Shown here piece by piece: positions 3,936-64,000 of a stretch of DNA of 64,000 nucleotides (its first letter is position 1; each line of letters begins with the position of its first letter). This DNA comes from Macrostomum lignano (lineage: Eukaryota): assembly GCA_002269645.1 (NCBI GenBank), contig NIVC01000109.1, forward strand, positions 731,670-795,669. Direction: 5' to 3'. The position numbers and the translations under genes were made by a program. A model generated the notes under the pieces. The model did no database searches and had not been told where the DNA came from. It saw only the letters and a program-made list of their open reading frames with translations.

Positions 3936-3965
3936 AGAAGGGGGAATGTCCTTGGCAATGGAAAT
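3936..3965 (+). mobile_element. Polypurine tract plus TG start of a + strand LTR that hosts later insertions (probably continues after 6315)
   Basis: AGAAGGGGGAA (3936-3946) directly followed by TGTCC at 3947; right end of this LTR not defined. Confidence 0.35.
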
Positions 3966-4753
3966 TATAGGAGGTTGCGCGCCTGTCGAGTTAAGCGGCT
4001 AAATATGTGACCAAACTTCTTGCACTTGTCACATCGGGCCTGTTGTCGGCCGTGGCTTTGTTGATAGCCAGTGGCTCCTTGCTGTGGTTGCTGTTCGTTC
4101 TTCAGCTTTCGGCACTCGGATGCCTTGTGTCCTCTCCTGTCGCACCATTGACATGTGATGTTGGCGTTTTCTTCTTTCGCATTCATCGTTGTTCGCGTCT
4201 CTTCCAATTTTTGACGTTCAGTTCTCATTTCTTCGACTACGGCAATGAGTTGGCGTTTAGTGCTTTCCTCTTCATCATAATCCTTCATAGATTGCCATAG
4301 GAGTGAAAACTTTAGCAAGTCATCTGTTGTTCTTATTGTCTTGGACATTAGGTACCGTCGTAGTCCTGGTACTGCATTCTGTTTGACTGTGGATATCTGC
4401 GCATCCTGCAGAATCTGGTGATTTCGGGCTATTCGTGCCCTCCTATTTTCCGCTGCTTCTTCTTCTGGTGCAGCCTCTTGGTATACCGCATTTTCCACCA
4501 ATCGTCGAATGTCTGCTATGAACTTATTGACGTCTTCATCGTGCGCCATTTTGCGTGCCCATAGTTGCGCTTGCGCCGCCTGCCGGTTGTCAGTTCTGGT
4601 GTCATAGGCTGTCCTTAAAGCTTGTGTTAGCTGTCCATAATCGTTCCTAATATTTTCTGGTTGCTCGCCGTAAATTGTTAGCGCATTTGGTTGCAGGAAC
4701 GCTGGTAGAATTCGAGCTTTCTCCGCGTCCGTCAGTCCGTACGTTCTCATCAT
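3965..4753 (-). pseudogene. gag: Retrotransposon Gag (capsid-like region + CX2CX4HX4C zinc knuckle; second knuckle truncated)
   Basis: CQWCDRRGHKASEC knuckle. The second knuckle CDKCKKFGH runs into LTR-derived sequence, and there is an in-frame stop upstream. Confidence 0.8.
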
Positions 4754-20526: not shown

Positions 20527-22284
20527 TTCAAAGTAGGAGGCAAATGGTGCATTAAAGTTCATTAAGACAGAACACTTCTGTGCATTTTGCATTGTTTCGT
20601 GCACAGTGAATGTACAATCTGATCCGGGCTTCAGTTTTAACTAATTTCAATTAATGCCATATTGGCAATAAATTTATCAAATTGCCGCGATTAAAATTCT
20701 ATTCGATTCCCATTTGAAAGATTGGCACCTATCTATAGCAGCGTGCTGAAGGCTGCAGCAATGGTTGTTTACCTACAGCGCGGTTCATCGCATGCAAGCG
20801 GTGCAATCCATATAGTTGGAAACGCCACAGACAAATCATGAGTGTATATAGCAACTCATTCGGTAAAACTTTGACTTCCTGACCGACTTGATGTCCTTAG
20901 TTTAGCTTCTCGATTGCTTAAAATGCACAGCTGACTGACTGTTTCCGAAAACAGATCAATAGTCGAGATTCTGGCAGCACTGTAGCAACTGATGAGGATG
21001 TGAACATAGTCTGAAAAAGACAGTAATATAGACAGTAGTAAGTGTAGAATCCGGCTTCGCTCTGCTGAGGTTCTTCAGTTAGTCAGGCTCAAGTCGTTTT
21101 AATTTGTCATTGAAAAAGGAACCGCCATAAAGGATGCCTTTCATCGCCTCCGACAGAAGCAAACGACTGTCGTGACCTAAGCGGTATTTGGGACATGATG
21201 TACATGAAGTCTGGCTAACTAACGCCTTCTGTAGCAGTGTGAAGGTGCTCTAGACTACGTGACGAAGAGCCTTTCTGTTAGTATTTGGGATTCAGTGTAT
21301 GTCTTCACGAAGTCCTACAGCGATCGCTTGAGCGAATACAGGGTACCAAGGTTTCTGTCAGATTCTGTATGAGAGTTGGATTGTAATCATGGGCTTAAAA
21401 ATAAAAATAAAATCTCATATTATACTCCATTCTCAAGCTGAACTTTGAAGCTGCTCGTGGGCACTTCCGGATTCTGCGCTCATTACGGTCCAATAATGGC
21501 ATCTGGCTGCGAATCAACCGCCCTGACATTCCGCTTCGATGTTCAGACTAATTTGACAGCCCTTATGCATGCAAATCCTTGCAGAAGCTCATTGTTTAAC
21601 ACAAGCCTATATTGAAATTCAAGTGTTCTTCAGAGTTCTGAACTGCAGAGACAGTGAGGTCAGAGCTGCTGCCCGAACAGTGCAATCCAGTACACGGACT
21701 GCTTGAGTAGACCCTGTAAACTCGACCACCGATGGAAAAGGCTAATGAGAGATACCAGTTACTCAAGGATCTTTCAAAACTAAGTTTGCCGGTATCTCAG
21801 GGAGTGAAGGATTTAGAGATCAATTATATTGATAATCAATCGAATATGCAGACAAAAGAAGTCTGGACACAATTCGATGCAGTGCAAGTATGTTGCACCC
21901 AAATTACTTTAAGTAGTATGCTAGGGTCATCCATGCATGAACTGAGTATTGGATGCAGAAAGAAATCCTAAACATAGGAAAAGGACTCCATTAAAGGCAG
22001 TCTCAAAGTTAAAAGATATGTGTCTAACCCAGAAACATCAGAAAGCTAGATGTTCAAATGGCAGAATTATATGAATTATTGAGCCGTCTAAAACCTTCCT
22101 GTTTCGTTAAAACTAGTAAAAAGTAACCTAAGATTAGGCCTACTAATCTTAATATTTCTGCAGGCAATATCAGAGCGTTCAAAAACGTTCCGCATTCAGA
22201 TATAAAGGGATTAAATAAAAATAATCATACCATCAAACTTTCTTATAGCCTCACTTTGCTAAGCTGCAGCTGTCTGTTCGGAGA

Positions 22285-22702
22285 GCACTCACTACTCCAA
22301 CCTCTCGAGAGCCCTGCACCACTCACTACTCAAACCCTTCCAGAGCCCTGCACCACTCACTACTCAAACCCTTCCAGAGCCCTGCACCACTCACTACTCA
22401 AACCCTTCCAGAGCCCTGCACCACTCACTACTCAAACCCTTCCAGAGTCCTGCACCACTCACTACTCAAACCCTTCCAGAGCCCTGCACCACTCACTACT
22501 CAAACCCTTCCTGAGCCCTGCACCACTCATTACTCAAACCCTTCCAGAGCCCTGCACCACTCACTACTCAAACCCTTCCTGAGCCCTGCACCACTCACTA
22601 CTCAAACCCTTCCAGAGCCCTGCACCACTCACTACTCAAACCCTTCCAGAGCCCTGCACTACTCACTACTCAAACCCTTCCAGAGCCCTGCACCACTCAC
22701 TT
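22285..22702. repeat. 34-bp minisatellite, longer copy of the 15985 array
   Basis: Seen directly. Confidence 0.95.
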
Positions 22703-23635
22703 TCTGCTCTCCGCAAACACCAGCTGGACAGACGGAGCAGCCGTCAATCTGACAGCTGACACACCGGGTTGCTACTGGATGCCAATCAGCCACAGCTGCT
22801 CTGTGCAGTCACAGCGAAATGGAAACACAGCGCTTCAGCTGCTGTCAGTGAGTCTCACACTGGCCCATGGTTGCACCTGTGTATTGGGTGCATGGCAACA
22901 ATGATCTGACATTTAGCTGTGAAAACTGACTCATTTCAGAGCACGAACTCAAGCAGCACATTCTCAGTGACTGTGAGCAGGAGCTGGGGAAGCTCAGCAT
23001 CAGTTTTGTGTCGGGTGAACCAGTCAGGACTGTTCGATGTAACGGCTCGTCGCGAGCTGCCTGCAGTTCTGTGTAAGTGTCCAAATAGCTCGTACTTCTG
23101 TTTTTTCCTTGATGCATATTTGATTTTTGATATTCGGATGTACCTACTAAAACAGGTGAAGACAAGCACGTATGTTTTTTGATCTGATCACTTTTAAGCC
23201 TCTACTATAATTTTGCAAAACTAAAGAATATCAATAAAAAAACCTGGCCTTGTGTAGTGAAGTATTTAAAAGAATTGGTCAAGTTAGGAAATCTTAAAAA
23301 CTTCACGTGGTCATTGGACCAAATCTTCGGGTTTCATAGTTGAAACTGCAGCGGCGAGTATATTCAATTTTAAACGTTTCCTTTCTATCTTCCTTCTTAC
23401 AGCTAAAAACTGACTGCACATGACTTGATTTACTTAAAGCAGCTGGTGATGTGCTGGGAGTGCGCATCAGTCAGCGCAACTGCAGTAAAGACGATACGAA
23501 GACGTGACGGTCAGGAGGTTCAGCTTGAGATCCGCCACACTGTTTCATCATCGAGGCGAATGAATGGAGGCTCCGTGATGTGCGGACTCGTGATAGATAA
23601 GCGAAATAATGAGAAATACTTCGTACAAAAACATT
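22703..23635 (+). pseudogene. Duplicated, truncated fragment of the Ig receptor
   Basis: 22703-23085 is nearly identical to 16143-16520; 23575-23635 matches 18262-18317; broken at ~23636. Confidence 0.8.
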
Positions 23636-23640
23636 TCCAA

Positions 23641-25251
23641 CTACTGCAGCTGCAACCCGGCAGTAGCCACAAACTGCCTCAGCTGGTCGAGCCTCTTTCT
23701 GGCAAAGTCGTCCAAGTTGTTGAACCTCTCGAACTCGCCCACCGCGGCGTCGACGGCTGCGACGTCGCAAGCGTCGGTAGCCAAAGCCAGCGACCTCACC
23801 AGCGAGAGCTCGTCGGTGTCCTTGAACGAGCTGCACAGCCCAACCAGCTGCTCCGCCTTCTCGCCGACTCCCGCAGCTCCTGAGCACAGCAGACACAGAC
23901 AGCTCTTGGCCAGGTGGTCCTTGGCTCCGAAGCTCAACAGACTGTGCTGCTCAGCCGACACTCCCAGATCCTCAAACACCGCAGCTGCCTCTGCCAGCCT
24001 CCCACAGTCCGCCATCAACTCCCCGGCCTTGGCGCGGCTGCCCGCAGCGCTGGCCGGACTGTCCTCGCCGCTCCAGAAGTCCGCCGCTCTCAAGTAGGCA
24101 TCGATGGCCTCCTCGACTTGCTGGGATGAAGCCAGCAGGTCTCCAGCCTCCTCCAGTTGTCTGGCAGCGATGGCCGCTTGTTGCAGGCACCGCACGGCCT
24201 TCGCTCTCGTGTCTGGCAGCTTGCGGTAGCAGTTCGCAGCCTCCGAGTAATTGTTGGCCGCATCGAGCTCGCATCGCCTTTGCTTTGAGAACAGCTCGGC
24301 TGCGGCTTCGAACGCCCGCCCAGCTTCGCTCCGTTTCTGATAAAGCTTCAGCTGGTTGCCCTGCTGCAGAAGTTTGGCGGTGTCAGTAGTTTGCAGTTGG
24401 GCTGACTGGGGCTGCGTCCGCACCGGGCCTTCAGGACGCGTCTGACTGCTGGTTTCATCATCTCTAGGAAAGCTAGGGTAGCAGTTCGCAGCCTCTGAGA
24501 CATTGTTGGCCACATATATCTCCTCGAATATCGCAGTCACCGCGGCGTCTCTTGACCAGTCACCAACTTCACTGCTTACAGCACAAATTCCGACAAGCCG
24601 CTCGAGCTGGCCCAGAAGCCGCAGCTGCAGCTCCTCATTGTCGCTCTTTTCTCTAAGCAGGCGCTCTGACCTCTCAAAGTCGGCCTCCAAGTCTCCAAGC
24701 GATTCGTGCATGGACTGGACCAGGCGAAGCAGCTCTGCCATGTCGCCTGCAGCCTCCGCCGTGGCCACCTCCTGCTTGTAGCTGGAGACGTCCTCGAAGT
24801 CCCGCTCGCACACACGCACTGCCTCAAGCACACTCGAGAGCTGGCCCGTCACCCTACTACGAAACGAGTCGATGTCTTGCTGTACCAAATCGAATTTGTG
24901 ATTGACCTCTTGCAGCTCCTGTTGAATGTCGAGAGCGAGACGACGCAGCGACTCAGCGTCTTGTTGCGGTCGCAGTAGCGCTGCACGGCTAACTGCACCT
25001 GCTGCGCGTTGTGACTCTTGTGACTCTTGTGAATCTTGTGACTCTTGTGAGTAGGCACGTAGCAGCTCTTCGACCTCCTCCTTGAGCTTGAATAGATTGG
25101 CCACATCGACACTGAGGTGTTGACTGCACATGTGGCAGCGGGAGAAAGGAGCCACACCGACTGCAGCTTTTTCGCAGATGATGCAGAGAGGAGTTGGGGT
25201 AGCGAGAGGCGCGTCCGAACTCGAGCTGTCGCTTGAGCTTTCGCGGCTCAT
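23641..25251 (-). CDS. 536-aa single-coding-exon protein: CxxC-x12-CxxC (B-box-like) + coiled coil + alpha-SNAP (NAPA-like) domain
   Basis: Open frame from CCAACA-ATG (25251) to TAG. C-terminal ~240 aa match SNAP motifs (AGRAF..AA, AANNYSEAANCYRK, AIDAYLRAADFWSGEDS, LLSFGAKD, LCLLC, F.D..E..L, V.EF....LD). Splice acceptor TTTCAG 21 nt upstream of the ATG. Confidence 0.8.
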   Translation of the reverse strand: MSRESSSDSSSSDAPLATPTPLCIICEKAAVGVAPFSRCHMCSQHLSVDVANLFKLKEEVEELLRAYSQESQDSQESQESQRAAGAVSRAALLRPQQDAESLRRLALDIQQELQEVNHKFDLVQQDIDSFRSRVTGQLSSVLEAVRVCERDFEDVSSYKQEVATAEAAGDMAELLRLVQSMHESLGDLEADFERSERLLREKSDNEELQLRLLGQLERLVGICAVSSEVGDWSRDAAVTAIFEEIYVANNVSEAANCYPSFPRDDETSSQTRPEGPVRTQPQSAQLQTTDTAKLLQQGNQLKLYQKRSEAGRAFEAAAELFSKQRRCELDAANNYSEAANCYRKLPDTRAKAVRCLQQAAIAARQLEEAGDLLASSQQVEEAIDAYLRAADFWSGEDSPASAAGSRAKAGELMADCGRLAEAAAVFEDLGVSAEQHSLLSFGAKDHLAKSCLCLLCSGAAGVGEKAEQLVGLCSSFKDTDELSLVRSLALATDACDVAAVDAAVGEFERFNNLDDFARKRLDQLRQFVATAGLQLQ

Positions 25252-25309
25252 TGTTGGATTGTTTGTGAGGAGCTGAAATGCAGATAAAGTTGAAACTCCA
25301 CAGAGTAAA

Positions 25310-25500
25310 AAGAGGGAGAAAAAAGGGAGAACAGAGGGAGAAGAGCGGGAGAAGAGAGAGAGCAGAGGGAGAAGAGCGGGAGAAGAGAGAGAACAGAGGG
25401 AGAACAGAGGGAGAAGAGCGGGAGAAGAGAGAGAGCAGAGGGAGAACAGAGGGAGAAGAGCGGGAGAAGAGAGAGAACAGAGGGAGAACAGAGGGAGCAG
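25310..25500. repeat. GA-rich simple repeat in the 5' intron of the SNAP-fusion gene
   Basis: Seen directly; accounts for the spurious N-terminal extension of ORF 23641-25539. Confidence 0.85.
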
Positions 25501-25572
25501 AAGGAAAAAGTGCTCAATGCGCTGTGGGATTAGCAACATTAGCAGATTTCAAGGAATTTCCAGCCTCATTCC

Positions 25573-26100
25573 AAACCGACTCACCTGTCAAATGCGAATG
25601 TAGTCGGATTTTGAATCAGTGAGTTCAGTGATGGTCAAGGAATACTTGGCTGAATATCCTCTGCTGCCAGTGCAAGGGTGCTGAGCTCTGCAAAAGCCAG
25701 TGTGCCACACTTTGAATCGGTGCCAGTATCGCAGGTTACAGAATTGCATCTCTGCAGCTGCAAGAATGCTCAGTCTGAGAAATTACTGAGCACACACTGG
25801 TACCTGTTTTGGGTGAATTTTCTATTGCAGACATTTATTATTTAAACTTTGTTCATCATTGCAGCGGTGCAAAATTCGAATTTCGAGCCATTCGATATTA
25901 GAAATGTGCATCGGAGACCGGGTTGGTCTGGGTGGCAACTCTTGCTGCACTCAACTGTGCTCTGCATTTTCTGCTGCGCCTCTCATTCCGTTTCTGTGTG
26001 TGCAACCTGCGGTCTGCTGTACTTTGCCAGCAGCTGTGCGAAGAAGCTCGCGTGTGCAGAGCGGCCCTGCAGTAACAATGGAAACTGCTGGCTGAGAAAC
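25573..26100 (-). pseudogene. Degenerate, inverted Ig-like exons upstream of the SNAP-fusion ORF
   Basis: Minus-strand KYSRPQV..STVECSKSCHPDQPGLRC..NGS and KYSLTITEL motifs with stops; GTGAGT donor near 25572. Confidence 0.35.
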
Positions 26101-26221
26101 AGTGGGGAAAGAGAAGGTGCGATGAGGACTGAGAGCTGTGCTCAGGAGAGATGTGCTCAGAAGAGGTGTGCTCAGGAGAGAGAACGTTGTCAATGGGCAG
26201 TGAATTCTGTGCAATTTTAAC

Positions 26222-26410: not shown

Positions 26411-26618
26411 GGAGTGCGCAGGCGGTCCGTGTGTGGCATTCTTGACGAATCAATTAAAAGTTTAATGTACAAGTTCTACATGAAGGTGAAATATGGGAAT
26501 AAAATAAAACTTCGGTATACAGACACAGACAGTTTGATCCTGAACATTGAAACAGTAGACTTTTATCAGGACCTTTTGACGCGGAAGGACTTGTATGACC
26601 TATCTGAATACCCAGAAC

Positions 26619-26945
26619 TGTTGGTTCTGGATTCACGGACACTAGGTCATATGAATAAAATGAGCAACTGCTCCAACTCAAGCATTTACTAGGGCCTGTA
26701 TGAATAAACTGAGAAATTGCTCATACTCTGATAATACTCTGAGATTGAGCCATTTCTCAGGTCAATAAGAACAAAACTGCTACCATAAACTTAATTTCTG
26801 AGCAATTGCTCAGAAAACGTTGAGGCAGCCTCCTGGCAGACTCAAGAACGAGTCGCAGTGTAAAAAGCAGATAAATCGTCAAAGCTAAACTCCTGAACTC
26901 CTGAAACTCCGGATAGTCTCTGACGATAAGGTTGACTGCGTAACA
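26619..26945 (-). mobile_element. 3' LTR-like segment (327 bp)
   Basis: Plus strand TGTTGGTTCTGGATTCACGGACACTA...GCGTAACA; shares only its termini with the 5' LTR. Confidence 0.65.
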
Positions 26946-26959
26946 TGTACTTCTGCCTA

Positions 26960-29300
26960 TTATCTGTAGGCATCGACTATTACGAGCAGGTACTTGTTGC
27001 CCTTAAACGGTCCAGCGTAGTCTGCGTGCACACGGCACCACTTTTCGCTTTCCTCTGGCCAAGATGCCCATTGGATTGATGCTCCATGGTCTTTATTTGT
27101 CTGGCAGGCGACGCATTGCTTAGTATGCCTAGTGACATCAGCGTCTATTCCTGGCCACCATACGCATTGTCTGGCGATGGGTTTCATCTTGTCCGCGCCT
27201 ATGTGGCCGTCGTGCAATAGTTGAAGAACTCTTTGTCGCTCCTCCTCCGGGATCAGCAGGCGTATTCCTCTGTAAAGAAGATCGTTCTCGATTGCCAGTT
27301 CGTCAAGAGTTCGAGCATATGTTGGTAACTCCTTGATTCCTCGGGCTGTCCAGCCATGCTTGACGAGCGCAAACAGTCGTCGCATCTCCTGATCAAGCAT
27401 TGACGTGCGCCTAAGCCGCTGCTTGTCAACTGGTATATCGAGTAGACTGTCCTGAATCGAGTTGACGTCGAATTGCTCGCTCTCCGCGGCACTATTATTC
27501 AATCGAGATAGGGCATCGGCGGCAGGGATCTACTCGGAACGCTTACACTCGATGACGTAATCATACTCCATGAGTGTGATCGCCCATAGCTGTAGCCTAG
27601 CAGCAGCAACCGTAGACAAGGCCTTTCCCGGGTTGAACAGGAATTTCAGTGGGTGATGGTCCGTCCTGAGCACCAACTTGCGTCCTAGCAAATATTTGTG
27701 GAGACGTTTAACCGCCCAGACTATGACTAGCGCCTCTCTTTCGATCTGTGCATAGTTTCTCTCAGCCTGTGTCAACGTCTTGGAGATAATTAGAACAGGA
27801 CCGGACGACTGATCTAACACGGCTCCCAGACCCACCGGTGATGCATCAGTCGTAAGTATAATATTGTCAGCTGGATCGAATGACTTTAGGAGTCCGGCGT
27901 TGTGCAATCTTTCCTTGATTGTGTTAAAGGCCTTCTGTTCTTGCCTTCCCCAGGTCCATCGCACACCTGACCTGGTTAGATTGGTCAATGAATCTTTCAA
28001 CGTAGCCAAGTTAGGAATGCATCGTCCATAGAAATCGACCATTCCCAAGAACGCCTGTAGTTGTTTGAGGTCGCTTTGCTCTTTTAATCCGGCAATGGCT
28101 TCCACTTCCTCCTTTAGAGGGCGAATTCCATCTGCACTGATCTCGTAGCCCAAAAATCGTATTGACGACTTGTTTAGTACAGACTTGTCAGCATTTATGC
28201 GAAGTCCATTGTTTTCCAGGATCTTCATTACTGTGTTGAGCCTTTCGTCATGATCAGTCTGACTTTCGCCCCAGATGAGGATATCGTCCTGGTAGGATAT
28301 CACGCCGTCGAGGTTTAGCAGGAGTTTATCCATATATGACTGGAAGATAGCGGGTGCTTGTTTTACCCCAAAAGCCAGTGAGGTTGGACGAAACAGGCCA
28401 AAGGGTGTGCTCCAAGTTTGCATCTGACTTGTCTCGGCGTCGACTGGTACCTGCAAGTATGCGTTTGTGAGATCTAGCGTGGAGAATTTCCGGGCTCGAC
28501 CCAATCTGGACATCACTTCATCTATCGATGGCGTTGTCGATACCATGTCTTCCAAGACTGGGTTCAGTGTTATCTTATAGTCGCCACAAATCCTGATACT
28601 TCCAGATTGCTTTCTGACACACACTATAGGCGTGGCCCATTCGCTCGATTGCACTTTCTCCAACTGTCCTTTCAGATTCCATTCTTCGTAGCTCGTTCTT
28701 TACGTCTTCTTGAATACCATAGGGAATCGGTCTTGGCTTGCAGAAAACGGGTTTTGCGCCTGGCCTGATCGATAGTGACGCCTTCACGGTGTCGACTGGA
28801 GACATGCGACTTGATTGCCGTTCTTCTGTGGTGTTAGCATTACCACCTTGGGTTATGGCGACATAAAGCTCCGGCTCCAGCTCTGCAATCCAGTCCAAAC
28901 CATATATGGGCTCCACATCTCTGTGGTCTACGACAAACAATGGCAGGTTCGCTACTGCACCGCCACGCTCTACTCTGACAGTAACTTCTCCTAAAACACG
29001 CACCGGATCTCCTTGGTATGCTGTAAATCATCGGGCTGTCGGTCTTAAATTGGATTTCAACGGAAGGCCTTGATACATCTTTAGCGATACAAATGATGAG
29101 ACGGATCCAGTGTCCATAATCATACGAAGATTGGCCCCATTGACCAGCAGAAGCCTTGTTATCCTGCGCCTGCTGGGCTCCTCACAGCTGCTATTTACGG
29201 AGAAAATGCTGTCAAGACCTACAGGTCCTGAAGAATCTTCCTGCGGTTCGATCGTCTGTCTTGACCGTTGAGCAGGTCTTGATGTATTAGACTTACACAC
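26960..29300 (-). pseudogene. pol: Gypsy pol (protease, RT, RNase H, truncated integrase), broken into several ORFs
   Basis: MDTGS, RICGDYK, YQDDILI, TDASPVGLGAVL, HDGHIG..CVWWPG..CVAC, VHADYAGP..VDAY then stop. Confidence 0.95.
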
Positions 29301-29324
29301 AGCTTTCAGATGGCCAGTCTTTCC

Positions 29325-30050
29325 TCAATTCAGGCAGGTCTTTGAACGGTGCTGGCAGACGTCCTTGCGGTGTCCATCCTTGCCACAGCAGAAACATTTT
29401 GCTTGGTTGCCATGGCTCTGTTGATTCCACTTGCCGTACCCGGTTGGCTGCCACGCTTTGCGATCGTTCTGTCGAGTCTCTGGCAAACGCGGTCGATCCG
29501 CCCTCTTGACCGATAAGATTTCGCTGCTGTTCATCTGTTTTTCACCACGCGCTACGGCTTCGCATGCGCTTGCCACGGACGTCACCCTCTCCCAGGTGAG
29601 GTCTGCGAGTTTTTCAGTTAGCAGTTTCCTCACGATGTCTTTGTTGAACAAGCCAAACACAAACTGGTCGCGCAACTTGTCGTTTAGGTCCGTGAATTCA
29701 CAGTTGTCCGCGGCTTGTCGAAGTCTCCTAGCGTAGGCCGACGTGTCTTCTTCGCTTTCCTGCTTCATGTCGTGGAAAGCGTACCTATAGGCCAGTCCCG
29801 ACTTCGATGCTTTCGTTTCGTTTGTTAGTAGCGTCTTTAACTGGTCGAAGGTCTTTTCCTCTGGCTTTGCTGGCAGTGAAGCGTCAGCCAGAAGGTTGAA
29901 CGCCTTTTTCCCCAGTTGTGCTATAAACGCGTACTTCAGCACGTCGTCGTTCCACTTGTTGACTTTGGCTATAGCCTCGAATCGCTGTAGCCATCTGCTG
30001 ACCTCGGCAGGCACGTCTGTCTCCAGGGGTTCGATTGGAATCGTCGCCAT
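29325..30050 (-). pseudogene. gag: Gypsy gag with CCHC knuckle
   Basis: MATIPIEP.., LRDQFVFGL, CFCCGKDGHRKDVC; ATG overlaps the PBS. Confidence 0.9.
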
Positions 30051-30061
30051 CCTCGTCGCCA
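30049..30061 (-). promoter_or_regulatory. PBS complementary to tRNA-Ser(GCU)
   Basis: Minus strand TGGCGACGAGGAT, 1 nt after the LTR-terminal CA. Confidence 0.8.
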
Positions 30062-30062
30062 G

Positions 30063-30301
30063 TGTTGGTTCTGAATGCACGGACACTATAACACCAATTT
30101 TGATGTAGCCTTTAGCTAGCTCGGTTATTTCTTAAGTGCTCCAGTTGAGCAGCTCTCTCTAATCACGCTTAGTGTATTTGAGCCTTGCGGCTCTGCTCAC
30201 TTTAATGAAAAGAGTATCGCTTGACAGTTTCGGCCATAGAGTATGCACCGTGGTAATAACTAACATAAGAGATTTTCTATAAACCATCTAAGCATCTAAC
30301 A
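30063..30301 (-). mobile_element. 5' LTR (239 bp)
   Basis: TGTTAGATGC...CAGAACCAACA on minus strand, between TSD and PBS. Confidence 0.85.
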
Positions 30302-34252: not shown

Positions 34253-35934
34253 CTACCTGGCAGGCGACTCAGGAGCCCAGGAACGAGCTGTGTGAGTTCT
34301 TCGCCGCCATTGTCAACGCGCCGCCACCCCCGCTGCCAGACAGTCTGACGCTGCCGCCGGAGATGCCGTTGCCGGCAGAGGAGAGCTTCAGCCTAGTACC
34401 AGTCAGCACAGCCGACGTTGTGAGGCTCACCTAACAGCCACCGGGCGGGAAAGCGCTGCGTCCGGACGAGGTGCCCATCGAGGCGCTGCGCGCATCCAAT
34501 GTGTGGCCAGTGAGGTCGCCAGAGTGATGAATCGCGTGCTCTTCGGTGAGGGTGCACCCAAAGAATGGACCACGGCGCACATCGTTGCAGTTCCTAAGAA
34601 GCCGGGCACCACGAGGCTTGAGGAGCATCGAGGCATCTGCCTTCAGTCCTGCGCTGCGAAGCTGTTCAACCGGATGCTGTTATCGCGGTTGCAGCCCGTG
34701 CTGGATCCGTACCTGCGTCCTGAGCAGAACGGCTTCCGGCCCCATCGCGGCACAGTAACGCAGATCCTGGCTCTTCGGCGAGTCATCGAGGAAGCACGGC
34801 TACGCCAGTCGATCCTGATTGTTATCTTCATAGATTTCAAGAAGGCATTCGACTCGGTCGTCAGGTCTGTGCTCCCATAGGTGCTCCGTGCGTACAACGT
34901 GCCAGAGCAGCTGATTTCCGCCATCATGGCGACGTACCGTGATAAGAAAGCTGCTGTTTGAACACCGGACGGCCTATCGGACTCCTTTGAGACATCCTCC
35001 GGGGTGCTTCAAGGAGATACGCTTGCGCCGTTCCTGTTTGTTCTGGTGCTTGACTGGGTGCTGCGGACCGCTCTTCCTACCAACGACGACGGCTTTCTGT
35101 TGCGGCGACGCGTGGGTCGACGTCAACCGGAGAGGCGGCTCAGCGTGCTTGGCTACGCCAACGACCTCGCCCTGCTGTCCTCAACTGTCGAGGGTGCCCA
35201 GCGACAACTGGACAAGCTAGTTGCTGTTGCGAAGAGTGTCGGCCTGGTGGTCAACACGCAGAAAACCGTCGCGTGATCTGCGTGCCGGACGACATCGAGG
35301 CTGCAATTTTATGCCGAGGCGCTGATGGACAGGCGACAGAGCTTCCGCGTTGTCAGCAGTTCGTCTACCTCGGCGGTCTGGTTCCCGGCGTCCGCGAGGA
35401 TCTGCGGCGTCGCCGCGGGCTTGTCTGGGCTGCATTTCGTTCTGTGAGGGCAGTCCTGCAGTCCGAGGCCTTATACCTGACCGCCAGAGGGCGGCGTTGT
35501 ACCAGGCGGTGATCGAGACCGTCCTACTGTACAACGCCGAGACATGGATGCTGACGGAGTCGCTCGAGCAGCAAGTTGACGCGGCGCACTCTGGCCTGCT
35601 GCGCGCCGCCTTCAAGATCGGCTACGAGCGAGTGACCAACGAAGCTTTGTATCGCCGCGCCGGCCTGGTGCGCCACCTGTTGCGCCGTCGGCGACTCCAA
35701 CTGGCAGGCCACATCATCCGCGCCGAGTCGTACTGCCCAGAGCCGGTGCAGGAGGTGCTGCTGCTAACGCTGCAGGCACCCTATATACCGGCGGGGGCAG
35801 GCGCGCACTCCGCGTTTCGTCGACTGCCTACTGGCTGACGCCGGCGCCCCCGATTCGGCTGGCGGCGTGGCGTCCATTCGCGACCTGGCTTTGAAGCGCG
35901 CCCTGTGACGCTAACTGCGTTGTTGTGTTGTTGT
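34253..35934 (+). mobile_element. 5'-truncated RTE-clade non-LTR retrotransposon, defective
   Basis: RT motifs PKKPG, LRPEQNGFRP, FIDFKKAFDSV, GVLQGDTLAPFLF, YANDL (YADD altered). (TTG)n tail, TSD TTACTGTACTA (34242-34252, 35935-35945), stops and frameshifts. Confidence 0.9.
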
Positions 35935-45600: not shown

Positions 45601-48061
45601 TCATTTCTACGCTGACCTGTGGCTGGGTCTGCTGCGCAGGCTGGCCCGGGCCGACCTGCGGGTGCCCCGGTTTGCCCACATGCTGCACCGCTGCCTGTCT
45701 GTGTACTGCCGGGCCCGGCCACTGCTGGCCGATGCCTTCTCTGTCGCCGCTGCTGCCGCAGCTGCCAACGCCGGCGGAGGCACGTCGCCATCTCGACAGT
45801 CGGCGATGCAGATGTCGGATGGCTGCGGTAGTGGCGCCGCACTTTGGTGGCAGCGCCAGGCCGAGGTGACCCGCCTTGGCGCCGAGCTGCTGCGCGCCTG
45901 CGTTGACGCCAAGCGCCGATCGGGCTTAAAGAGCGGCTCAGTTGCCGCCGACTCTGCCGACAATAACAACTATGACGATCAGGCCGAAGTTCGGACTCGG
46001 GTTGTGGATTATCTGGCTGATTCGGCGAGGCTGCTGGCTCTGGTCTGCGATCTGGGCGGCGATGAAGCTGTAGCGGAGGCTGAGGCCGAGGCAGAGGCCA
46101 GCGGAGCCGATTTGTCGACTGGGACGGCGCTGCCGCGGCCGCAGACGTCGCCGTGGTCCTCGGGGCCGCTGGACAGTCAAGCGCCTGACGTGGCGCCGGA
46201 CGGCACTCTGACGCCTCTGGGCCGCTACCAGCTCGCTAATAATGCCAGGCGCTTCCAGTATATGCCTTACTCTGGCGACTGGGACAGGTGAGTGAGCGGC
46301 TGAGCCTTTGAGTTTTTCCTTTTCTTAATCTACTAAAGTTACCCAGACAATGGCCTCTAAACCTACCCTGAGAATGGCCTCAAAACCTTCCCTGAGAATG
46401 GCCTCGAAATCTACCCTGAGAATAGCCTCTAAACCCTGAGAATTGCCTCTAAACCTACCCTGAAATGGCCTCTAAACCTACCCAGAGAATGGGCTCTAAA
46501 CCCTGAGAATGGCCTCTAAACCCTGTGAATTGCCTCTAAACCTACCCTGAGAATGGCCTCTAAACCTACCCTGAGAATGGCCTCTAAACCTACCCTGAGA
46601 ATGGCCTCTAAACCTACCCTGAGAATGGCCTCTAAACCTACCCTGAGAATGGCCTCTAAACCTACCCTGAAATGGCCCCTAAACCTACCCTGAGAATGGC
46701 CTCTAAACCTACCCTGAGAATGGCCTCTAAACCTACCCTGAGAATGGCCTCTAAACCTACCCTGAGAATGGCCCCTAAACCTACCCTGAGAATGGCCTCT
46801 AAACCTACCCTGAAATGGCCCCTAAACCTACCCTGAGAATGGCCTCTAAACCTACCCTGAGAATGGCCTCTAAACCTACCCTGAAATGGCCCCTAAACCT
46901 ACCCTGAGAATGGCCTCTAAACCTACCCTGAGAATGGCCTCTAAACCTACCCTGAAATGGCCTCTAAACCTACCCTTAGAATGGCCTCTAAACCTACCCT
47001 GAGAATGGCCTCTAAACCTACCCTGAGAATGGCCTCTAAACCTACCTTGAGAATGGCCTCTAAACCTACCCTGAGAATGGCCTCTAAACCTACCCTGAGA
47101 ATGGCCTCTAAACCTACCCTGAGAATGGCCTCTAAACCTACCCTGAAATGGCCCCTAAACCTACCCTGAGAATGGCCTCTAAACCTACCCTGAAATGGCC
47201 CCTAAACCTACCCTGAGAATGGCCTCTAAACCTACCCTGAGAATGGCCTCTAAACCTACCCTGAAATGGCCCCTAAACCTACCCTGAGAATGGCCTCTAA
47301 ACCTACCCTGAGAATGGCCTCTAAACCTACCCTGAGAATGGCCTCTAAACCTACCCTTAGAATGGCCTCTAAACCTACCCTGAGAATGGCCTCTAAACCT
47401 ACCCTTAGAATGGCCTCTAAACCTACCCTGAGAATGGCCTCTAAACCTACCCTGCCGCCGCAGGCAGCCAGTCAGGTCCTGGGAATGCGGCACCCTAGTG
47501 GTGCTCACCACCGAGTTGTCGGACTGGCTCACCCACCTGGCCGGCCGAGACCGACTCGAATCTCTATGCTCGCGGTCCCGGCTAGCTCACCTATTGCTGG
47601 CGGCGCCAAACGAGCGCGATCGTCTGCGCCGGCGCCTCGGCCGACGCGCGGCGCCAATTTTACGAGTATGCTCTTCTTCTTCTTCGTCGCGAGAGTGTAA
47701 AGATCGGGCCGGAGATGCGAGAATCTCATTGAGATGGCTGGCGGGCTACCCGACCCTGTTGGTGATGCTGGCAGCCTATGCCGCTTACAGCTGCCTGCTT
47801 GGCTACAAGTCTCTGGCCTTATTCTGCTTGCTAATAGCTTTCACCAAGTTCTGCCTGCTAGTGCTCGATGAGGCCTGCTGGATTTGGAGATTCGGATCGG
47901 CAAATCCTGCTGGTGCTACTACTGCTAGCAATAGTACTAGTAGTAGTGCTAGTAAAAGTCCGGCTCTGGATGTGTCTGACTGTTCTCGGCTTGTTGGTTC
48001 CGGTATTAGAAGCGGCCCGATACCGTTTCCCGGCTTGGATGCGTCCTCTTTGGCCGATTGA
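42629..48061 (+). CDS. SMPD4: Sphingomyelin phosphodiesterase 4 (neutral sphingomyelinase 3) ortholog
   Basis: Exons 42629-42718, 43275-44090, 44619-44897, 45506-46287, 47464-48061, all in phase. Motifs EVHTALPTLLDNILG, FLAPAGP..YDFPVSRL, PTPDHV.LVR..VKYLHHF, WLSYLQPWRY, LTPLGRYQ, QPVRSWE, and a C-terminal TM. No ATG in the first exon seen. Confidence 0.9.
42786..43152. repeat. 17-bp-subunit intronic minisatellite (GATGAGATGCAGGGAAT)
   Basis: SMPD4 intron. Confidence 0.9.
44095..44540. repeat. ~21-bp intronic minisatellite (TTGGTTGCTGATTGGGGAGTC)
   Basis: SMPD4 intron. Confidence 0.9.
44911..45110. repeat. 51-bp intronic minisatellite
   Basis: About four copies of GCAGTGTGATCTTTTAGGCAGGTTGGTCACTTG... 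Confidence 0.9.
46347..47452. repeat. 24/22-bp intronic minisatellite (GAGAATGGCCTCTAAACCTACCCT)
   Basis: Fills the last SMPD4 intron up to the acceptor. Confidence 0.95.
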
Positions 48062-48479
48062 TTTATGGTGTAATTGTTGTCTCTCATTCCTTAGTGCATT
48101 TTCTAATTTCACTTTGTTTAAACTAATCTTGAAGCATTGCGTTCTAGCATGAGAAAGGTGTAGCGTCTTGTGACCCGGACAATTAGATGGTAGAATTCGT
48201 TTCACCTGAAGGATCGGTGAGTGTAGCGGATTATAATTCAAGTCAAGTACATTTGCTTTTGTATGTGTTTAATCTTGCTGTGTATTCATCATCACTATTT
48301 CACTATACGCGTTTGAGTTCCTTTTTTACGCTCGTAAGTAGTGCAATTGTGTAGTATTGTATTTTTTAATATCATAAATAAATATGTATTGGCGTTTAAT
48401 CAGCATGTCATGTTGGCAAGCTTGCTGTTCATTCATTATTTTGTCACAATTGTGCTGGCTGGGCTTTAGGGGCTGGCCA

Positions 48480-48491
48480 TTTATCTATCTG

Positions 48492-48526
<35 letters not shown>

Positions 48527-48551
48527 GTCTATCTATCTGTCTGTCTATCTG

Positions 48552-48610
<59 letters not shown>

Positions 48611-48611
48611 G

Positions 48612-48650
<39 letters not shown>

Positions 48651-48675
48651 GTCTATCTATCTATCTATCTGTCTG

Positions 48676-48710
<35 letters not shown>

Positions 48711-48774
48711 GTCTGTCTATCTGTCTATCTATCTATCTATCTGTCTGTCTATCTACTATCTGTCTATCTATCTG

Positions 48775-48805
<31 letters not shown>

Positions 48806-48885
48806 GTCTATCTATCTATCTATCTGTCTATCTATCTGTCTATCTATCTATCTATCTATCTGTCTATCTATCTATCTATCTATCA

Positions 48886-48921
<36 letters not shown>

Positions 48922-48946
48922 GTCTGTCTATCTATCTATCTATCTG

Positions 48947-49002
<56 letters not shown>

Positions 49003-49006
49003 CCTG

Positions 49007-49057
<51 letters not shown>

Positions 49058-49060
49058 CTC
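48480..49060. repeat. (TCTA/TCTG)n microsatellite between SMPD4 and the Kelch gene
   Basis: Seen directly. Confidence 0.95.
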
Positions 49061-49169
49061 TACCACCAGTGCAGCTCATCCACAAGCCCCACCGCATCAC
49101 TTCAGCCCTGAGTCGGACACCGCCAGCCCAGCCGCAGACTCCGCACTCGACAACCTGCCCAGCTGAGCG

Positions 49170-54577: not shown

Positions 54578-54659
54578 CGCTCTGGCATTGTTGCTGCTGC
54601 TGCTGCACTGTCTTTTCTGGTAATTGGAGCTGTGTGACCTAGACTGATTTAGGTAAGTT

Positions 54660-55280
54660 AGATCAGATTGTGAATGCTAATTAGATTGTGTGAATCCTGA
54701 TTAGATTTTGTGAATGTTGATCAGATTTTGTGAATGTTGATTAGATTGTCTGAATGCTGATTAGATTGTGTGAATGCTGATTAGATTGTGTGAATGTTGA
54801 TCAGATCGTGTGAATGCTGATTAGATTGTGTGAATGTTGATCAGATTGTGTGAATGCTGATTAGATTGTGTGAATGCTGATTAGATTGTGTGAATGTTGA
54901 TCAGATTGTGTGAATGCTGATTAGATTGTGTGAATGTTGATCAGATTGTGTGAGTGTTGATCAGATTGTGTGAATGCTAATTAGATTGTGTGAATCCTGA
55001 TTAGATTGTGTGAATGTTGATCAGATTTTGTTAATGCTGATTAGATTGTGTGAATCCTGATCAGATTGTGTGAATGTTAATCAGATTGTGTGAGTGTTGA
55101 TCAGATTGTGTGAATGCTGATTAGATTGTGTGAATGCTGATTAGATTGTGTGAATGCTGATTGAATTGTGTAAATGCTGATTAGATTGTGTAAATGTTGA
55201 TCAGATTGTGTGAATGCTAATTAGATTGTGTGAATGCTGATTAGATCGTGTAAATGTTGATCAGATTGTGTGAATGTTAG
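54660..55280. repeat. 20-bp minisatellite (ATTAGATTGTGTGAATGCTG)
   Basis: Starts right after the AG|GTAAGT donor at 54653. Confidence 0.95.
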
Positions 55281-55744
55281 TTTGGTTGAATAATTAATAC
55301 TGCTTATATTGTGTGAGCATTGGTCACATTGTGTCGGAGGTTGCTGTGAAATGTGATCCAGTTGTGAGTCATAATCACCGTTTAGTGTGAGAAAAAGTTC
55401 CGCTGCAGTCTATTTTTCGGTTTCATTCTTGCTTTGTTTTGATATTTCGCTAGGCGCATTTCTCCTCTGTATATTATTGATTTTTTTCACCTCATAAAAT
55501 ACTTATCGCGCACCTGTAAAGCTGGGATACCCTGTTGCTGATTACCTGTGTCTCTATGGATCATCTTCATTCGCTAATGCGTGTAAAATTTTAAATGTTA
55601 TGAGAAGAGATGGCCACCAGTCTATCAAGCCTTATTTTCAATTTGATTTGTATTGTTAATACCTTTATTTCAATATCAAGTAATATCTTTGCCCACACCC
55701 CCTACCATGCGCTGTGTGTTTATCACAACACGCTAGGGCTAGCT

Positions 55745-56500: not shown

Positions 56501-56595
56501 CATCCTTCTCTCTAGAACCCATCCCACACAATATATCCCATCAGCCTCTTTAACTCCCTACAAAATCCTAATTATCTGCAACATAATCTTGTTTC

Positions 56596-56642
56596 AATAA
56601 AGCTTCTTTGCTTGTTTCTGCGAGTAATTTTCTTTCTCCTAG
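56596..56642 (+). promoter_or_regulatory. AATAAA poly(A) signal followed by a U-rich tract and a strong 3' splice acceptor (candidate trans-splice site for ISCU)
   Basis: AATAAA at 56596-56601; TTTTCTTTCTCCTAG ends at 56642; ISCU ATG at 56667. Confidence 0.6.
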
Positions 56643-56666
56643 CAACCGAAATCCAAGCAACCAAGC

Positions 56667-62704: not shown

Positions 62705-62789
62705 CTGTGTGTGACAGGTTGCTTTTAATGAAATTTTTAGTGCCTCAAAAAGTTTTAGTTGTTCGCTGATTTGTCAGTTTTTGGGTCAA

Positions 62790-63995: not shown

Positions 63996-64000
63996 CTTAG

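What the first reader, a model, noticed from the sequence alone, without database searches (positions are those of the whole stretch)
23641..25251. Intact Zn-finger/coiled-coil-alpha-SNAP fusion gene (TRIM-like architecture with a SNAP effector domain)
Seen: a 536-codon stop-free ORF in otherwise decayed sequence, with a good start context and an in-frame acceptor 21 nt upstream. It has CIIC-x12-CHMC (25126-25185), about 130 aa of heptad-like sequence, a linker and a nearly complete SNAP fold. Known: canonical SNAPs are stand-alone NSF adaptors with an N-terminal hydrophobic membrane loop and a penultimate Leu (L294 in alpha-SNAP) needed for NSF stimulation; soybean Rhg1 alpha-SNAP variants act in defence. 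Here the membrane loop is replaced, part of the DMGRF helix is deleted, the acidic tail is lost and a penultimate Leu is kept (..GLQLQ). Inference: a dimerising, B-box-like scaffold carrying a SNARE/NSF-binding or decoy domain. I know no described family with this architecture. Its position in a receptor cluster suggests an immune role.
Basis: partly seen in the sequence, partly recalled or inferred. Interest (0 to 1): 0.85.

Follow-up and report, generated by a model that had tools for sequence, protein, structure and literature searches.

The report
Flatworm zinc-knuckle/coiled-coil–SNAP chimeric gene
An intact, unannotated gene in the flatworm Macrostomum lignano joins the front half of a zinc-knuckle/coiled-coil/NHL gene to the SNAP-like domain of a membrane-anchored SNAP paralog; it looks selectively maintained, but nothing yet shows that it is expressed.

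Summary
Window 25251-23641 (-) is an intact 536-codon ORF with a CCCC zinc knuckle, about 180 aa of helix and a confident SNAP fold. The window is Macrostomum lignano contig NIVC01000109.1.

The gene is a DNA-level chimera of two intronless, tandemly arrayed families specific to this lineage. One parent is a RING-less zinc-knuckle/coiled-coil/NHL family, which supplied about 0.9 kb of 5' flank and aa 1-245. The other is a family of SNAP-like proteins with variable membrane anchors, which supplied aa 259-536. The two are joined through a 46-nt copy of an internal SNAP segment.

No protein in the searched databases combines both halves. Changes private to this copy show purifying selection (dN/dS about 0.3). 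There are no frameshifts, although neutral divergence is 7-8% and the flank carries many indels. It is therefore probably a maintained gene, not a fresh pseudogene.

Against function:
- The transcript-based annotation of this same assembly has no model here.
- A conserved Trp is lost.
- Ten residues of a helix hairpin are lost.

- Pfam and PDB profile searches did not detect a B-box.
- There is no RING and no receptor cluster.
- The missing membrane loop and acidic tail were inherited from the parent family, not created by the fusion.
- NSF coupling is doubtful, and an immune role is unsupported.

The parts
25279..26140 (-). 5' flank inherited from the zinc-knuckle/coiled-coil/NHL parent family (putative promoter/5'UTR). 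It includes the CT-rich 11/31/42-nt tandem repeat at 25310-25510.
   Evidence: 88.5-89.1% identical to the 5' flanks of paralogs in L003 and L002. Homology stops at about 26140. Tandem repeat.
25273..25278 (-). TTTCAG splice acceptor 21 nt upstream of the ATG. It is conserved in the paralogs and is likely an SL trans-splice or 5'UTR acceptor.
   Evidence: Sequence. Conserved in the paralog alignment. Transcript-based partial CDS models of paralogs start 1-3 codons before the ATG (P0004, P0008). 38.8% of M. lignano genes are trans-spliced (PMC5730564).
23641..25251 (-). Intact chimeric ORF, 536 codons plus TAG.
   Evidence: The exact protein is absent from all collections.
25126..25185 (-). C23-x2-C26-x12-C39-x2-C42 zinc knuckle (followed by H45 and D49), a single CCCC site.
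   Evidence: Invariant in paralogs, including the 49%-identical P0017. Pfam gives only Zn_ribbon_12 at E = 0.004-0.05 and no zf-B_box. No B-box found in the PDB.
24508..25131 (-). Helical/coiled-coil region, aa 41-248, including the (SQE/D)n 9-nt repeat at 25009-25050.
   Evidence: AlphaFold2 helices. Heptad periodicity z up to 7.6. 91.6-93.7% nt identity to the paralogs.
24477..24522 (-). Junction patch: a 46-nt direct-repeat copy (85% identical) of the gene's own internal SNAP segment at 24225-24270. It encodes YVANNVSEAANCY. Parent-family homology on the N-terminal side ends at 24518.
   Evidence: family D4.
24406..24476 (-). Disordered linker derived from the last Cys-rich (CCFPRDEE) repeat of a lipid-anchor-type SNAP-like paralog. 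All the anchor Cys residues are lost.
   Evidence: 82% identical to L001:16259-16303. Parental ORF L001:16102-17178. pLDDT below 50 for aa 246-276.
23647..24405 (-). SNAP-like domain, aa 283-535. The private 30-nt deletion lies between 24172 and 24171, and the private W307R change is in this domain.
   Evidence: PF14938 at 129.6 bits against 163-172 bits in the paralogs. pLDDT 93-98. Foldseek finds alpha-SNAP/Sec17. 89-95% nt identity to 12 paralogs. Residue table.
23621..23640 (-). The last ~20 nt of paralog-type 3' flank. Homology ends here and the rest of the 3'UTR is new sequence.

Best explanation
This is a species- or genus-specific chimeric gene in Macrostomum lignano, made by a DNA-level rearrangement. 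The rearrangement joined two pieces. One is the promoter-proximal flank plus the zinc-knuckle and coiled-coil half of an intronless, RING-less 'B-box-type'/coiled-coil/NHL gene. The other is the linker plus SNAP-like domain of an intronless, Cys-rich (lipid-anchor type) member of a tandemly arrayed, membrane-anchored SNAP-like family. A 46-nt templated copy of an internal SNAP segment fills the junction.

Shown: the ~2.5-kb island sits alone on a different contig from both parental arrays. Since it diverged from them it has accumulated about 7-8% neutral divergence, while the reading frame and amino-acid sequence stayed under purifying selection.

Inferred: it is transcribed from the inherited promoter and (trans-)spliced at the conserved acceptor. 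The product is a soluble protein that oligomerises through its coiled coil, possibly with the 85-89%-identical NHL paralogs. It presents SNAP-like domains on a flexible ~40-aa linker. These domains keep the SNARE-bundle-facing residues but lack both the membrane anchor and most NSF-contact residues. The most likely action is as a soluble, multivalent SNARE-complex binder, competitor or adaptor, not as a canonical NSF cofactor.
For: Source and parents:
- Window 46667-64000 is 100% identical to NIVC01000109.1.
- The N half has 84-89% aa identity to P0002-P0009. The C half has 81-88% to P0005/10/11/16. No hit covers both halves.
- Both parent families are intronless and arrayed.

Breakpoints and patch.

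Selection:
- Pairwise dN/dS is 0.38-0.56.
- Private substitutions are 12 synonymous / 16 nonsynonymous in the N half and 9 / 5 in the C half. Combined dN/dS is about 0.3, P = 0.0003-0.006 for kappa 1-4.
- Four private-divergence estimates agree: N-half synonymous sites 8.5%, C-half synonymous sites 8.0%, the 5' flank 7.0%, and the patch 3 of 39. This fits one old event.
- P(no stop) is about 0.004-0.008 at 8% neutral drift.
- The ~0.8-kb flank has about 8 small indels, most not multiples of three. The ORF has only in-frame indels.

Fold and residues:
- Structure and fold search.
- Equivalents of K93/K94, K122 (Arg), K167, L197, Y200 (Phe) and K203 are kept. D217 is Gly, and only 1 of 4 NSF-contact acidic residues is kept.
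Against: - There is no expression evidence. The GenBank annotation of this assembly is transcriptome-derived (PMC5730564). It models the neighbouring genes and both parent families but nothing at this ORF.
- The copy has lost a Trp that is conserved in 33 of 45 SNAPs and in all paralogs. It has also lost 10 residues of a helix hairpin, and its Pfam score is 35-40 bits lower than its parents'.
- It lost the parental 3'UTR, and no AATAAA lies within 340 nt.
- The private branch may partly predate the fusion if closer, unannotated parents exist. In the N half the window is the outgroup to the sampled paralogs, so 'private' changes are not polarised there.
- Oligomerisation, zinc binding, SNARE binding and NSF independence are all inferred, not shown.
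Confidence: 0.55

Rival explanations
1. It is a chimeric pseudogene, a by-product of the very high duplication and rearrangement rate of this neopolyploid, repeat-rich genome. On this view the open frame and low dN/dS were inherited from functional parents, because the fusion is more recent than the private branch suggests.
For: - Not annotated in a transcript-based annotation.
- Embedded between a satellite and a gypsy element.
- Lost a conserved Trp and 10 aa of a helix hairpin.
- Lost the parental 3'UTR.
- Both families turn over fast, with paralog-paralog dN/dS of 0.4-1.0.
- An in-frame junction has a prior of only about 1/3, so it is not improbable by chance.
Against: - The nearest known relatives are no more than 89% aa / 95% nt identical.
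- The patch differs at 4 of 39 positions from its own source inside the gene.
- Both halves and the flank show the same 7-8.5% private neutral divergence.
- There is no stop or frameshift in 1.6 kb, although the adjacent flank is rich in indels.
Confidence: 0.3
2. The gene is functional, but the N-terminal module is what matters. It would act as an NHL-less, dominant-negative or regulatory partner that heteromerises with the coiled-coil/NHL paralogs, with the SNAP-like domain as a largely inert passenger.
For: - The coiled coil is 85-89% identical to the paralogs.
- The SNAP domain carries the damaging-looking private changes, the deletion and W307R.
Against: Private dN/dS is lower in the SNAP half (0.17-0.35) than in the N half (0.40-0.43). 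That points to constraint on the SNAP domain itself. AlphaFold2 keeps the fold at pLDDT 93-98.
Confidence: 0.1
3. It is an assembly artefact that joins reads from a TRIM-like locus and a SNAP-like locus.
For: Both parents are multi-copy, and the assembly is known to be difficult and redundant (PMC5730564).
Against: - The halves are 5-11% diverged from every other copy, so no pair of sampled loci could be collapsed to produce them.
- The two families share no repeat at the junction that could mislead an assembler.
- The junction carries a diverged templated insertion and is in frame.
- The island has unique flanks on both sides.
Confidence: 0.03

Closest known systems
Alpha/beta/gamma-SNAP and yeast Sec17 (Pfam PF14938), the NSF/Sec18 adaptors
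   Same: The same TPR-like helical sheet plus C-terminal bundle. Equivalents of K93/K94, K122, K167, L197, Y200 and K203, and a penultimate Leu, are kept.
   Different: About 25-30% identity. Lacks helix 1 and the hydrophobic membrane loop, and has no acidic tail. The D217 equivalent is Gly. Ten residues (alpha-SNAP 108-117) are deleted. It carries a 280-aa N-terminal zinc-knuckle/coiled-coil extension. Canonical SNAPs are stand-alone proteins of about 290 aa.
M. lignano membrane-anchored SNAP-like paralogs (BOX15_Mlig022924g1/g2, Mlig021756g2, Mlig027212g2; arrays on NIVC01000090.1 and NIVC01000684.1)
   Same: Direct parent of aa 259-536, at 81-88% aa and 89-95% nt identity. Shares the C-terminal ..QLQ, Gly at the D217 position and absence of the loop.
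   Different: The parents have a TM helix, a mucin-like ectodomain plus TM, or a Cys-rich MGNICSC-type lipid anchor at the N-terminus. The chimera has none of these and is predicted soluble. It also has the private deletion and W307R.
M. lignano 'B box-type domain-containing' coiled-coil/NHL paralogs (BOX15_Mlig004830g1, Mlig016838g1, Mlig030027g1 and others), resembling RING-less TRIM-NHL proteins such as Brat
   Same: Direct parent of the 5' flank and aa 1-245, at 84-89% aa identity. Same zinc knuckle, SQE repeat, coiled coil and conserved acceptor.
   Different: The NHL beta-propeller is completely replaced. No NHL remnant is left in the window.
HAP40 (F8A), a SNAP-fold protein repurposed as a huntingtin partner
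   Same: A SNAP-like fold used outside the NSF cycle. It is recovered by the fold search (ranks 32-37).
   Different: The structural match is much weaker than to alpha-SNAP, and there is no sequence relationship or shared architecture.
Soybean Rhg1 alpha-SNAP variants (from memory, not tested here)
   Same: SNAPs with an altered C-terminus and impaired NSF interaction that act as interfering or toxic variants.
   Different: Those are point or C-terminal variants of a canonical stand-alone alpha-SNAP in a plant resistance locus. Here there is a domain fusion in an animal, with no defence context.

Membership tests
SNAP family (PF14938) | Profile match above the curated gathering score | tested here: met
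   129.6 bits against a cutoff of 25, aa 292-521, profile positions 35-274 of 282.
SNAP family (PF14938) | SNAP/Sec17 three-dimensional fold | tested here: met
   AlphaFold2 pLDDT 93-98 over aa 283-535. Foldseek best hits are alpha-SNAP/Sec17, E = 3e-11, target-normalised TM 0.74-0.81. This is a predicted model, and AlphaFold2 is insensitive to the deletion and to W307R.
Canonical alpha-SNAP function (NSF adaptor) | N-terminal hydrophobic membrane-insertion loop | tested here: not met
   The profile match starts at position 35, so helix 1 and the loop are absent. They are replaced by a disordered linker. This is also true of the parents.
Canonical alpha-SNAP function (NSF adaptor) | SNARE-bundle-facing residues K93/K94, K122, K163, K167, L197, Y200, K203 (the residue list is from memory of the alpha-SNAP literature) | tested here: met
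   The equivalents are R343, K344, R364, G404, K408, L438, F441 and K444. All but the K163 equivalent are conserved or conservatively replaced. Binding itself was not tested.
Canonical alpha-SNAP function (NSF adaptor) | NSF-contact acidic residues (D217, E249, E252, E253), the acidic C-terminal tail and the penultimate Leu (the residue list is from memory) | tested here: not met
   The equivalents are G458, L490, D493 and A494, and there is no acidic tail. Only the penultimate Leu (L535) is kept. D217 is Asp in 39 of 45 other SNAPs.
TRIM/RBCC | RING finger | tested here: not met
   Only 22 Ser/Asp-rich residues precede the single CxxC...CxxC motif. No RING is hit in Pfam.
TRIM/RBCC | B-box zinc finger (two zinc sites; Pfam PF00643) | tested here: not met
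   PF00643 is not hit at E<=1 or E<=10 in the protein, its first 64 aa, or three parents. A profile of the region finds no B-box in the PDB. Only four Cys plus His45/Asp49 are present, with no ligands in the 12-residue loop. UniRef calls the paralogs 'B box-type', which is a lead only. PROSITE was not available.
TRIM/RBCC | Antiparallel dimeric coiled coil after the B-box | tested here: inconclusive
   Long helices and heptad periodicity are present. Foldseek finds no TRIM coiled coil. The oligomeric state cannot be tested here.
M. lignano zinc-knuckle/coiled-coil/NHL family | NHL beta-propeller C-terminal domain | tested here: not met
   No NHL match in the protein or anywhere in the window. 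The N half is 84-89% identical to family members.
M. lignano membrane-anchored SNAP-like family | N-terminal TM helix or Cys-rich lipid anchor | tested here: not met
   The parents carry them. In the chimera the anchor is truncated to ..CYPSFPRDDE.. with the Cys cluster gone.

The most novel reading that the evidence does not exclude
The ORF is an expressed, selected new gene that wires a self-associating zinc-knuckle/coiled-coil scaffold to a SNARE-binding but NSF-uncoupled SNAP-like domain. It would be the soluble offshoot of an undescribed flatworm radiation of membrane-anchored SNAP-like proteins. That radiation comprises at least 12 tandem genes with hypervariable ecto-, TM or lipid-anchor N-termini, and may regulate or police membrane fusion and secretion independently of the canonical NSF cycle.
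Probability: 0.3. Interest if true: 0.65.

Novelty: new variant of a known kind. Interest (0 to 1): 0.45.

Why it matters
If it is expressed, this would be a dated, mechanistically readable case of new-gene birth by domain swap. All three breakpoints, a templated junction insertion and both parent arrays are identified.

It would also be the first SNAP-fold protein found on an oligomerising zinc-knuckle/coiled-coil scaffold. It points to a larger unstudied family of membrane-anchored SNAP-like proteins in a tractable regeneration model that has transgenesis and RNAi. That family would allow a direct test of what a SNAP fold does when it is hard-wired to membranes or dimerised and apparently uncoupled from NSF.

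If it is not expressed, it is an ordinary by-product of a highly duplicated, repeat-rich genome.

Tried and rejected
- B-box/TRIM membership: Pfam at lenient thresholds, a PDB profile search, two AlphaFold2 runs and a Foldseek search of the N half all failed to give a B-box or TRIM coiled-coil match.
- Existing proteins with this architecture: I looked among the best 150 of 538 representative hits, then ran Pfam on the long SNAP proteins. Their extra length is SNAP/TPR duplication or unrelated sequence, with no zinc-finger or coiled-coil N-terminus.
- Assigned one search hits to other loci: every hit is at most 89% identical to the window protein, so none is encoded at this locus.
- Annotation or expression record: exact look-ups of the 536-aa and 632-aa products, and of nine neighbouring ORFs, found nothing on record. 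Full-text and supplement searches for the parents' locus tags also found nothing.
- NHL remnants or parental flank beyond the island: none found.
- TE-capture signatures (terminal inverted repeats or flanking direct repeats) around the island: none found.
- The bacterial promoter/terminator scan is irrelevant for a eukaryote and was ignored.
- Homeologous contigs (NIVC01002709.1, NIVC01000476.1) at the equivalent position: I could not reach them, because only 10-kb flanks around ISCU were retrievable.
- The first full-length MAFFT alignment (A1) forced NHL against SNAP, so I discarded it.
Full report
**1. The observation**

The minus-strand ORF 25251..23641 is open for 536 codons. The stop-to-stop frame runs on to an ATG at 25539. 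That extension is a translated CT-rich 11/31/42-nt tandem repeat and is not coding.

The CIIC-x12-CHMC motif is at 25185-25126. A TTTCAG acceptor lies at 25278-25273, and 21 ATG-free nucleotides separate it from the start codon.

Pfam gives SNAP PF14938 at E = 2e-37 over aa 292-521. The PDB sequence search gives alpha-SNAP at E = 6e-17 and Sec17 at 4e-8.

An AlphaFold2 model built with 51 aligned sequences has these features:
- pLDDT 93-98 across aa 283-535;
- a disordered linker (aa 246-276, pLDDT below 50);
- long helices at 41-82, 94-168, 171-228 and 234-248;
- an unresolved first 48 residues.

Foldseek puts alpha-SNAP/Sec17 chains first (E = 3e-11, target-normalised TM 0.74-0.81), followed by gamma-SNAP and HAP40. 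Heptad periodicity is significant in aa 99-161 and 169-217.

**2. Where the window comes from**

The homologs are all Macrostomum lignano. The window's ISCU exon is 100% identical to BOX15_Mlig025566g2. Window 46667-64000 matches contig NIVC01000109.1 of GCA_002269645.1 over 17,334 nt with no mismatch or gap. The window is therefore NIVC01000109.1:731670-795669.

That assembly's GenBank annotation is derived from a genome-guided transcriptome, after transcripts overlapping repeats were removed (PMC5730564). It models four neighbouring genes:
- mit_SMPDase-like;
- BTB-Kelch;
- ISCU;
- an fn3/Ig gene.

It has no model for this ORF.

The surroundings are a 34-nt satellite (22184-22795), Ty3/gypsy pol and gag-like ORFs (26960-30086) and other repeats. 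There is no receptor cluster.

**3. What it is: a chimera of two lineage-specific families**

No database protein covers more than 48% of the query.

*N-terminal parent.* Residues 1-245 are 84-89% identical (about 92% at the nucleotide level) to a multi-copy family. UniRef labels it 'B box-type domain-containing'. Its members are intronless proteins of about 550 aa with the same zinc knuckle, an (SQE)n repeat, a coiled coil and weak NHL repeats.

*C-terminal parent.* Residues 259-536 are 81-88% identical (89-95% at the nucleotide level) to intronless SNAP-like genes. These lie in tandem arrays on NIVC01000090.1 (at least 7 copies in 21 kb) and NIVC01000684.1 (at least 5 copies).

The SNAP-like genes share a constant SNAP-like domain but have very different N-termini:
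- a single TM helix;
- a Ser/Thr-rich mucin-like ectodomain plus a TM helix;
- a Cys-rich MGNICSC...CCFPRDEE repeat that looks like a myristoyl/palmitoyl anchor;
- a repeat-rich long form.

Outside M. lignano, the nearest SNAPs are ordinary proteins of about 290 aa at roughly 30% identity.

**4. Anatomy of the fusion**

- Homology to the NHL family covers about 0.9 kb of 5' flank (to ~26140) and stops at 24518 (...GAGGAGAT).
- Next comes a 46-nt patch (24522-24477). It is an 85%-identical direct copy of the gene's own internal SNAP segment at 24270-24225, and it encodes YVANNVSEAANCY.
- From 24473 the sequence follows the last Cys-rich repeat and linker of the lipid-anchor-type paralog (L001:16102-17178).
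- Homology to the SNAP paralogs ends about 20 nt after the stop codon.
- Beyond 26140 and 23621 nothing matches either parental locus.

The unit is a 2.5-kb island on a contig that carries neither array. The retained non-coding 5' flank indicates DNA-level duplication, not retroposition. The templated insertion at the joint is typical of microhomology- or template-switch-mediated repair; that mechanistic reading is an inference.

Both breakpoints fall in inter-domain linkers. One is about 10 residues before the NHL domain. The other lies inside the membrane anchor. The exchange is a clean in-frame domain swap.

**5. Is it maintained?**

*Pairwise comparison.* Nei-Gojobori dN/dS against the paralogs is 0.38-0.49 for the N half and 0.44-0.56 for the C half. 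That is no higher than among the paralogs themselves, which give 0.4-1.0.

*Private substitutions.* At sites where all sampled paralogs agree, the changes private to the window are as follows:

| Region | Synonymous | Nonsynonymous | dN/dS |
|---|---|---|---|
| N half | 12 | 16 | about 0.40 |
| C half | 9 | 5 | about 0.17 |

Combined, the excess of synonymous changes has P = 0.0003 to 0.006 for transition/transversion ratios of 1-4.

*Consistent dating.* Four estimates of private neutral divergence agree:
- 8.5% at N-half synonymous sites;
- 8.0% at C-half synonymous sites;
- 7.0% in the non-coding 5' flank;
- 3 private differences in 39 nt of the junction patch.

This agreement is what a single, fairly old event would give, after which the copy no longer shared in concerted evolution with the arrays. 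That link is an inference.

*Open frame.* At 8% neutral drift the chance of keeping 536 codons free of stops is about 0.004-0.008. The ~0.8-kb flank differs from the paralogs by about 8 small indels, nearly all not multiples of three. All length differences in the ORF are in frame: 30 nt in the SNAP domain, 57 nt in the linker and the SQE repeat units.

*Caveats:*
- Closer unannotated parents cannot be excluded.
- In the N half and the flank the window is the outgroup to the sampled copies, so changes there are not polarised.
- The CT-rich flank is prone to indels.

*Points against function:*
- There is no gene model in this assembly's transcript-based annotation.
- W307R is a private change at a position that is Trp in 33 of 45 other SNAPs and in all paralogs.
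- The private 10-residue deletion removes the tip of a helix hairpin (the equivalent of alpha-SNAP 108-117).
- The Pfam score is 35-40 bits below the parents'.
- The parental 3'UTR is lost.

I put the probability that this is a maintained, functional gene at about 0.55-0.6. A pseudogene gets about 0.3, and an assembly artefact about 0.03.

**6. How it probably works (inferred)**

The inherited 5' flank and the TTTCAG acceptor are conserved across the paralogs. Transcript-based partial CDS models of paralogs begin only 1-3 codons before the ATG (P0004, P0008). In M. lignano 38.8% of genes are trans-spliced. The ATG at 25251 would then be the first AUG of a (trans-)spliced mRNA.

The predicted product, from N- to C-terminus, has:
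- a Ser/Asp-rich tail;
- one CCCC zinc site;
- about 180 residues of coiled-coil-like helix;
- a flexible linker of about 40 residues;
- a SNAP-like domain.

The SNAP-like domain keeps the equivalents of alpha-SNAP K93/K94, K122 (as Arg), K167, L197, Y200 (as Phe) and K203, plus a penultimate Leu. It has Gly for D217, keeps only one of the four NSF-facing acidic residues, and has no acidic tail. The whole parental family shares these features. The functional roles of these residues come from my memory of the alpha-SNAP literature.

In the parents a covalent membrane anchor stands where canonical SNAPs have the hydrophobic loop. The chimera has neither. The most economical model is a soluble, coiled-coil-oligomerised SNARE-bundle binder with weak or no NSF coupling. 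It may heteromerise with the NHL paralogs. It would act as a competitor or adaptor, not as a disassembly cofactor.

I give SNARE binding about 0.3 and an immune role about 0.1. Nothing in the window supports the immune role.

**7. Comparison with known families**

It is a member of the SNAP superfamily by profile and by fold. It fails the tests for a canonical NSF adaptor, because it lacks the membrane loop, D217 and the acidic tail.

It is not a TRIM. There is no RING. The B-box test also failed: Pfam zf-B_box is absent at E<=10 in the protein and in its parents, a PDB profile search finds no B-box, and the models have low confidence there. The coiled coil is unmatched in Foldseek. 'RING-less TRIM-NHL-like' is at most an analogy for the parent.

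No protein combining the two halves was found in three searches:
- 5.8 billion clustered proteins;
- 1.84 billion representatives (with Pfam checks of the long hits);
- an exact look-up in 15 billion sequences.

The searchable literature describes neither this architecture nor the membrane-anchored SNAP-like family.

**8. Verdict**

This is a real, architecturally unique, probably selected but unannotated chimeric gene. I rate it a new variant of known kinds: a SNAP-fold protein and a new gene born by domain shuffling.

The TRIM/B-box label, the receptor-cluster context and the idea that the fusion itself removed the membrane loop and acidic tail are not supported.

Interest is moderate at 0.45. 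The parental radiation of anchored SNAP-like genes may be the more interesting lead.

Noticed in passing
L001 1143-19979, L005 10001-12372 (NIVC01000090.1); L006 1238-18590 (NIVC01000684.1): Two tandem arrays (at least 7 and at least 5 copies) of intronless SNAP-like genes. They share a near-constant SNAP domain but have hypervariable N-termini: a TM helix, a mucin-like ectodomain plus TM, a Cys-rich MGNICSC lipid-anchor type, and an ADDQTTK-repeat long form. All have Gly at the alpha-SNAP D217 position, no acidic tail and a penultimate Leu. I found no description in the searched literature.
   Followed up: partly
window 46667-64000 = L007 1-17334; L008, L009: The window is NIVC01000109.1:731670-795669 of assembly Mlig_3_7. 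The block mit_SMPDase / BTB-Kelch / ISCU / fn3-Ig occurs on three contigs at about 92-96% identity, as expected for this hidden polyploid. Whether the other two copies carry the chimeric gene could not be checked.
   Followed up: partly
window 26960-30086 (-), 34527-34880 (+), 3965-4753 (-): Several retroelement ORFs. Ty3/gypsy ORFs (integrase zinc-binding domain, RT plus RNase H, and a gag-like ORF without a Pfam hit) lie directly upstream of the island. There is also a separate RT fragment and a PNMA/gag-like ORF with a zinc knuckle.
   Followed up: partly
window 22184-22795: A 34-nt satellite of about 12-13 copies at 96% identity, just downstream of the gene. In one frame it reads as a repetitive ORF.
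   Followed up: no
window 25310-25510 and 25009-25050: A CT-rich 11/31/42-nt tandem repeat lies immediately 5' of the start codon. It is also present, at different copy numbers, upstream of the NHL paralogs, and it creates the spurious 632-aa ORF extension. A 9-nt repeat inside the CDS encodes (SQE/D)n and varies in copy number among the paralogs.
   Followed up: partly
window 26414-26692 (+): A short ORF with a YTDTDS motif reminiscent of family-B DNA polymerases, possibly a Maverick/Polinton-type fragment. Pfam does not hit it.
   Followed up: partly
window 23609-24097 (+); L001 1763-2335, 8419-8937, 10567-11079 (-): An ORF of 160-190 aa antisense to the SNAP domain is open both in the window and in several paralogs. 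It most likely reflects the GC-rich codon composition and is not a gene.
   Followed up: no
L001 18927-19979: One SNAP-like paralog carries an in-frame internal duplication of about 39 aa (ARQLEEAGDLLASSQQVKEAIDAYLRAADFWSGEDSPASA). It lies right next to the site of the window's 10-aa deletion, which suggests this segment is prone to slippage.
   Followed up: no
window 56667-57788 (+) and 56765-57804 (-): The first ISCU exon reads through into a G/W-rich satellite (WDGSVGWECGMG units on the opposite strand), giving several long overlapping spurious ORFs.
   Followed up: no
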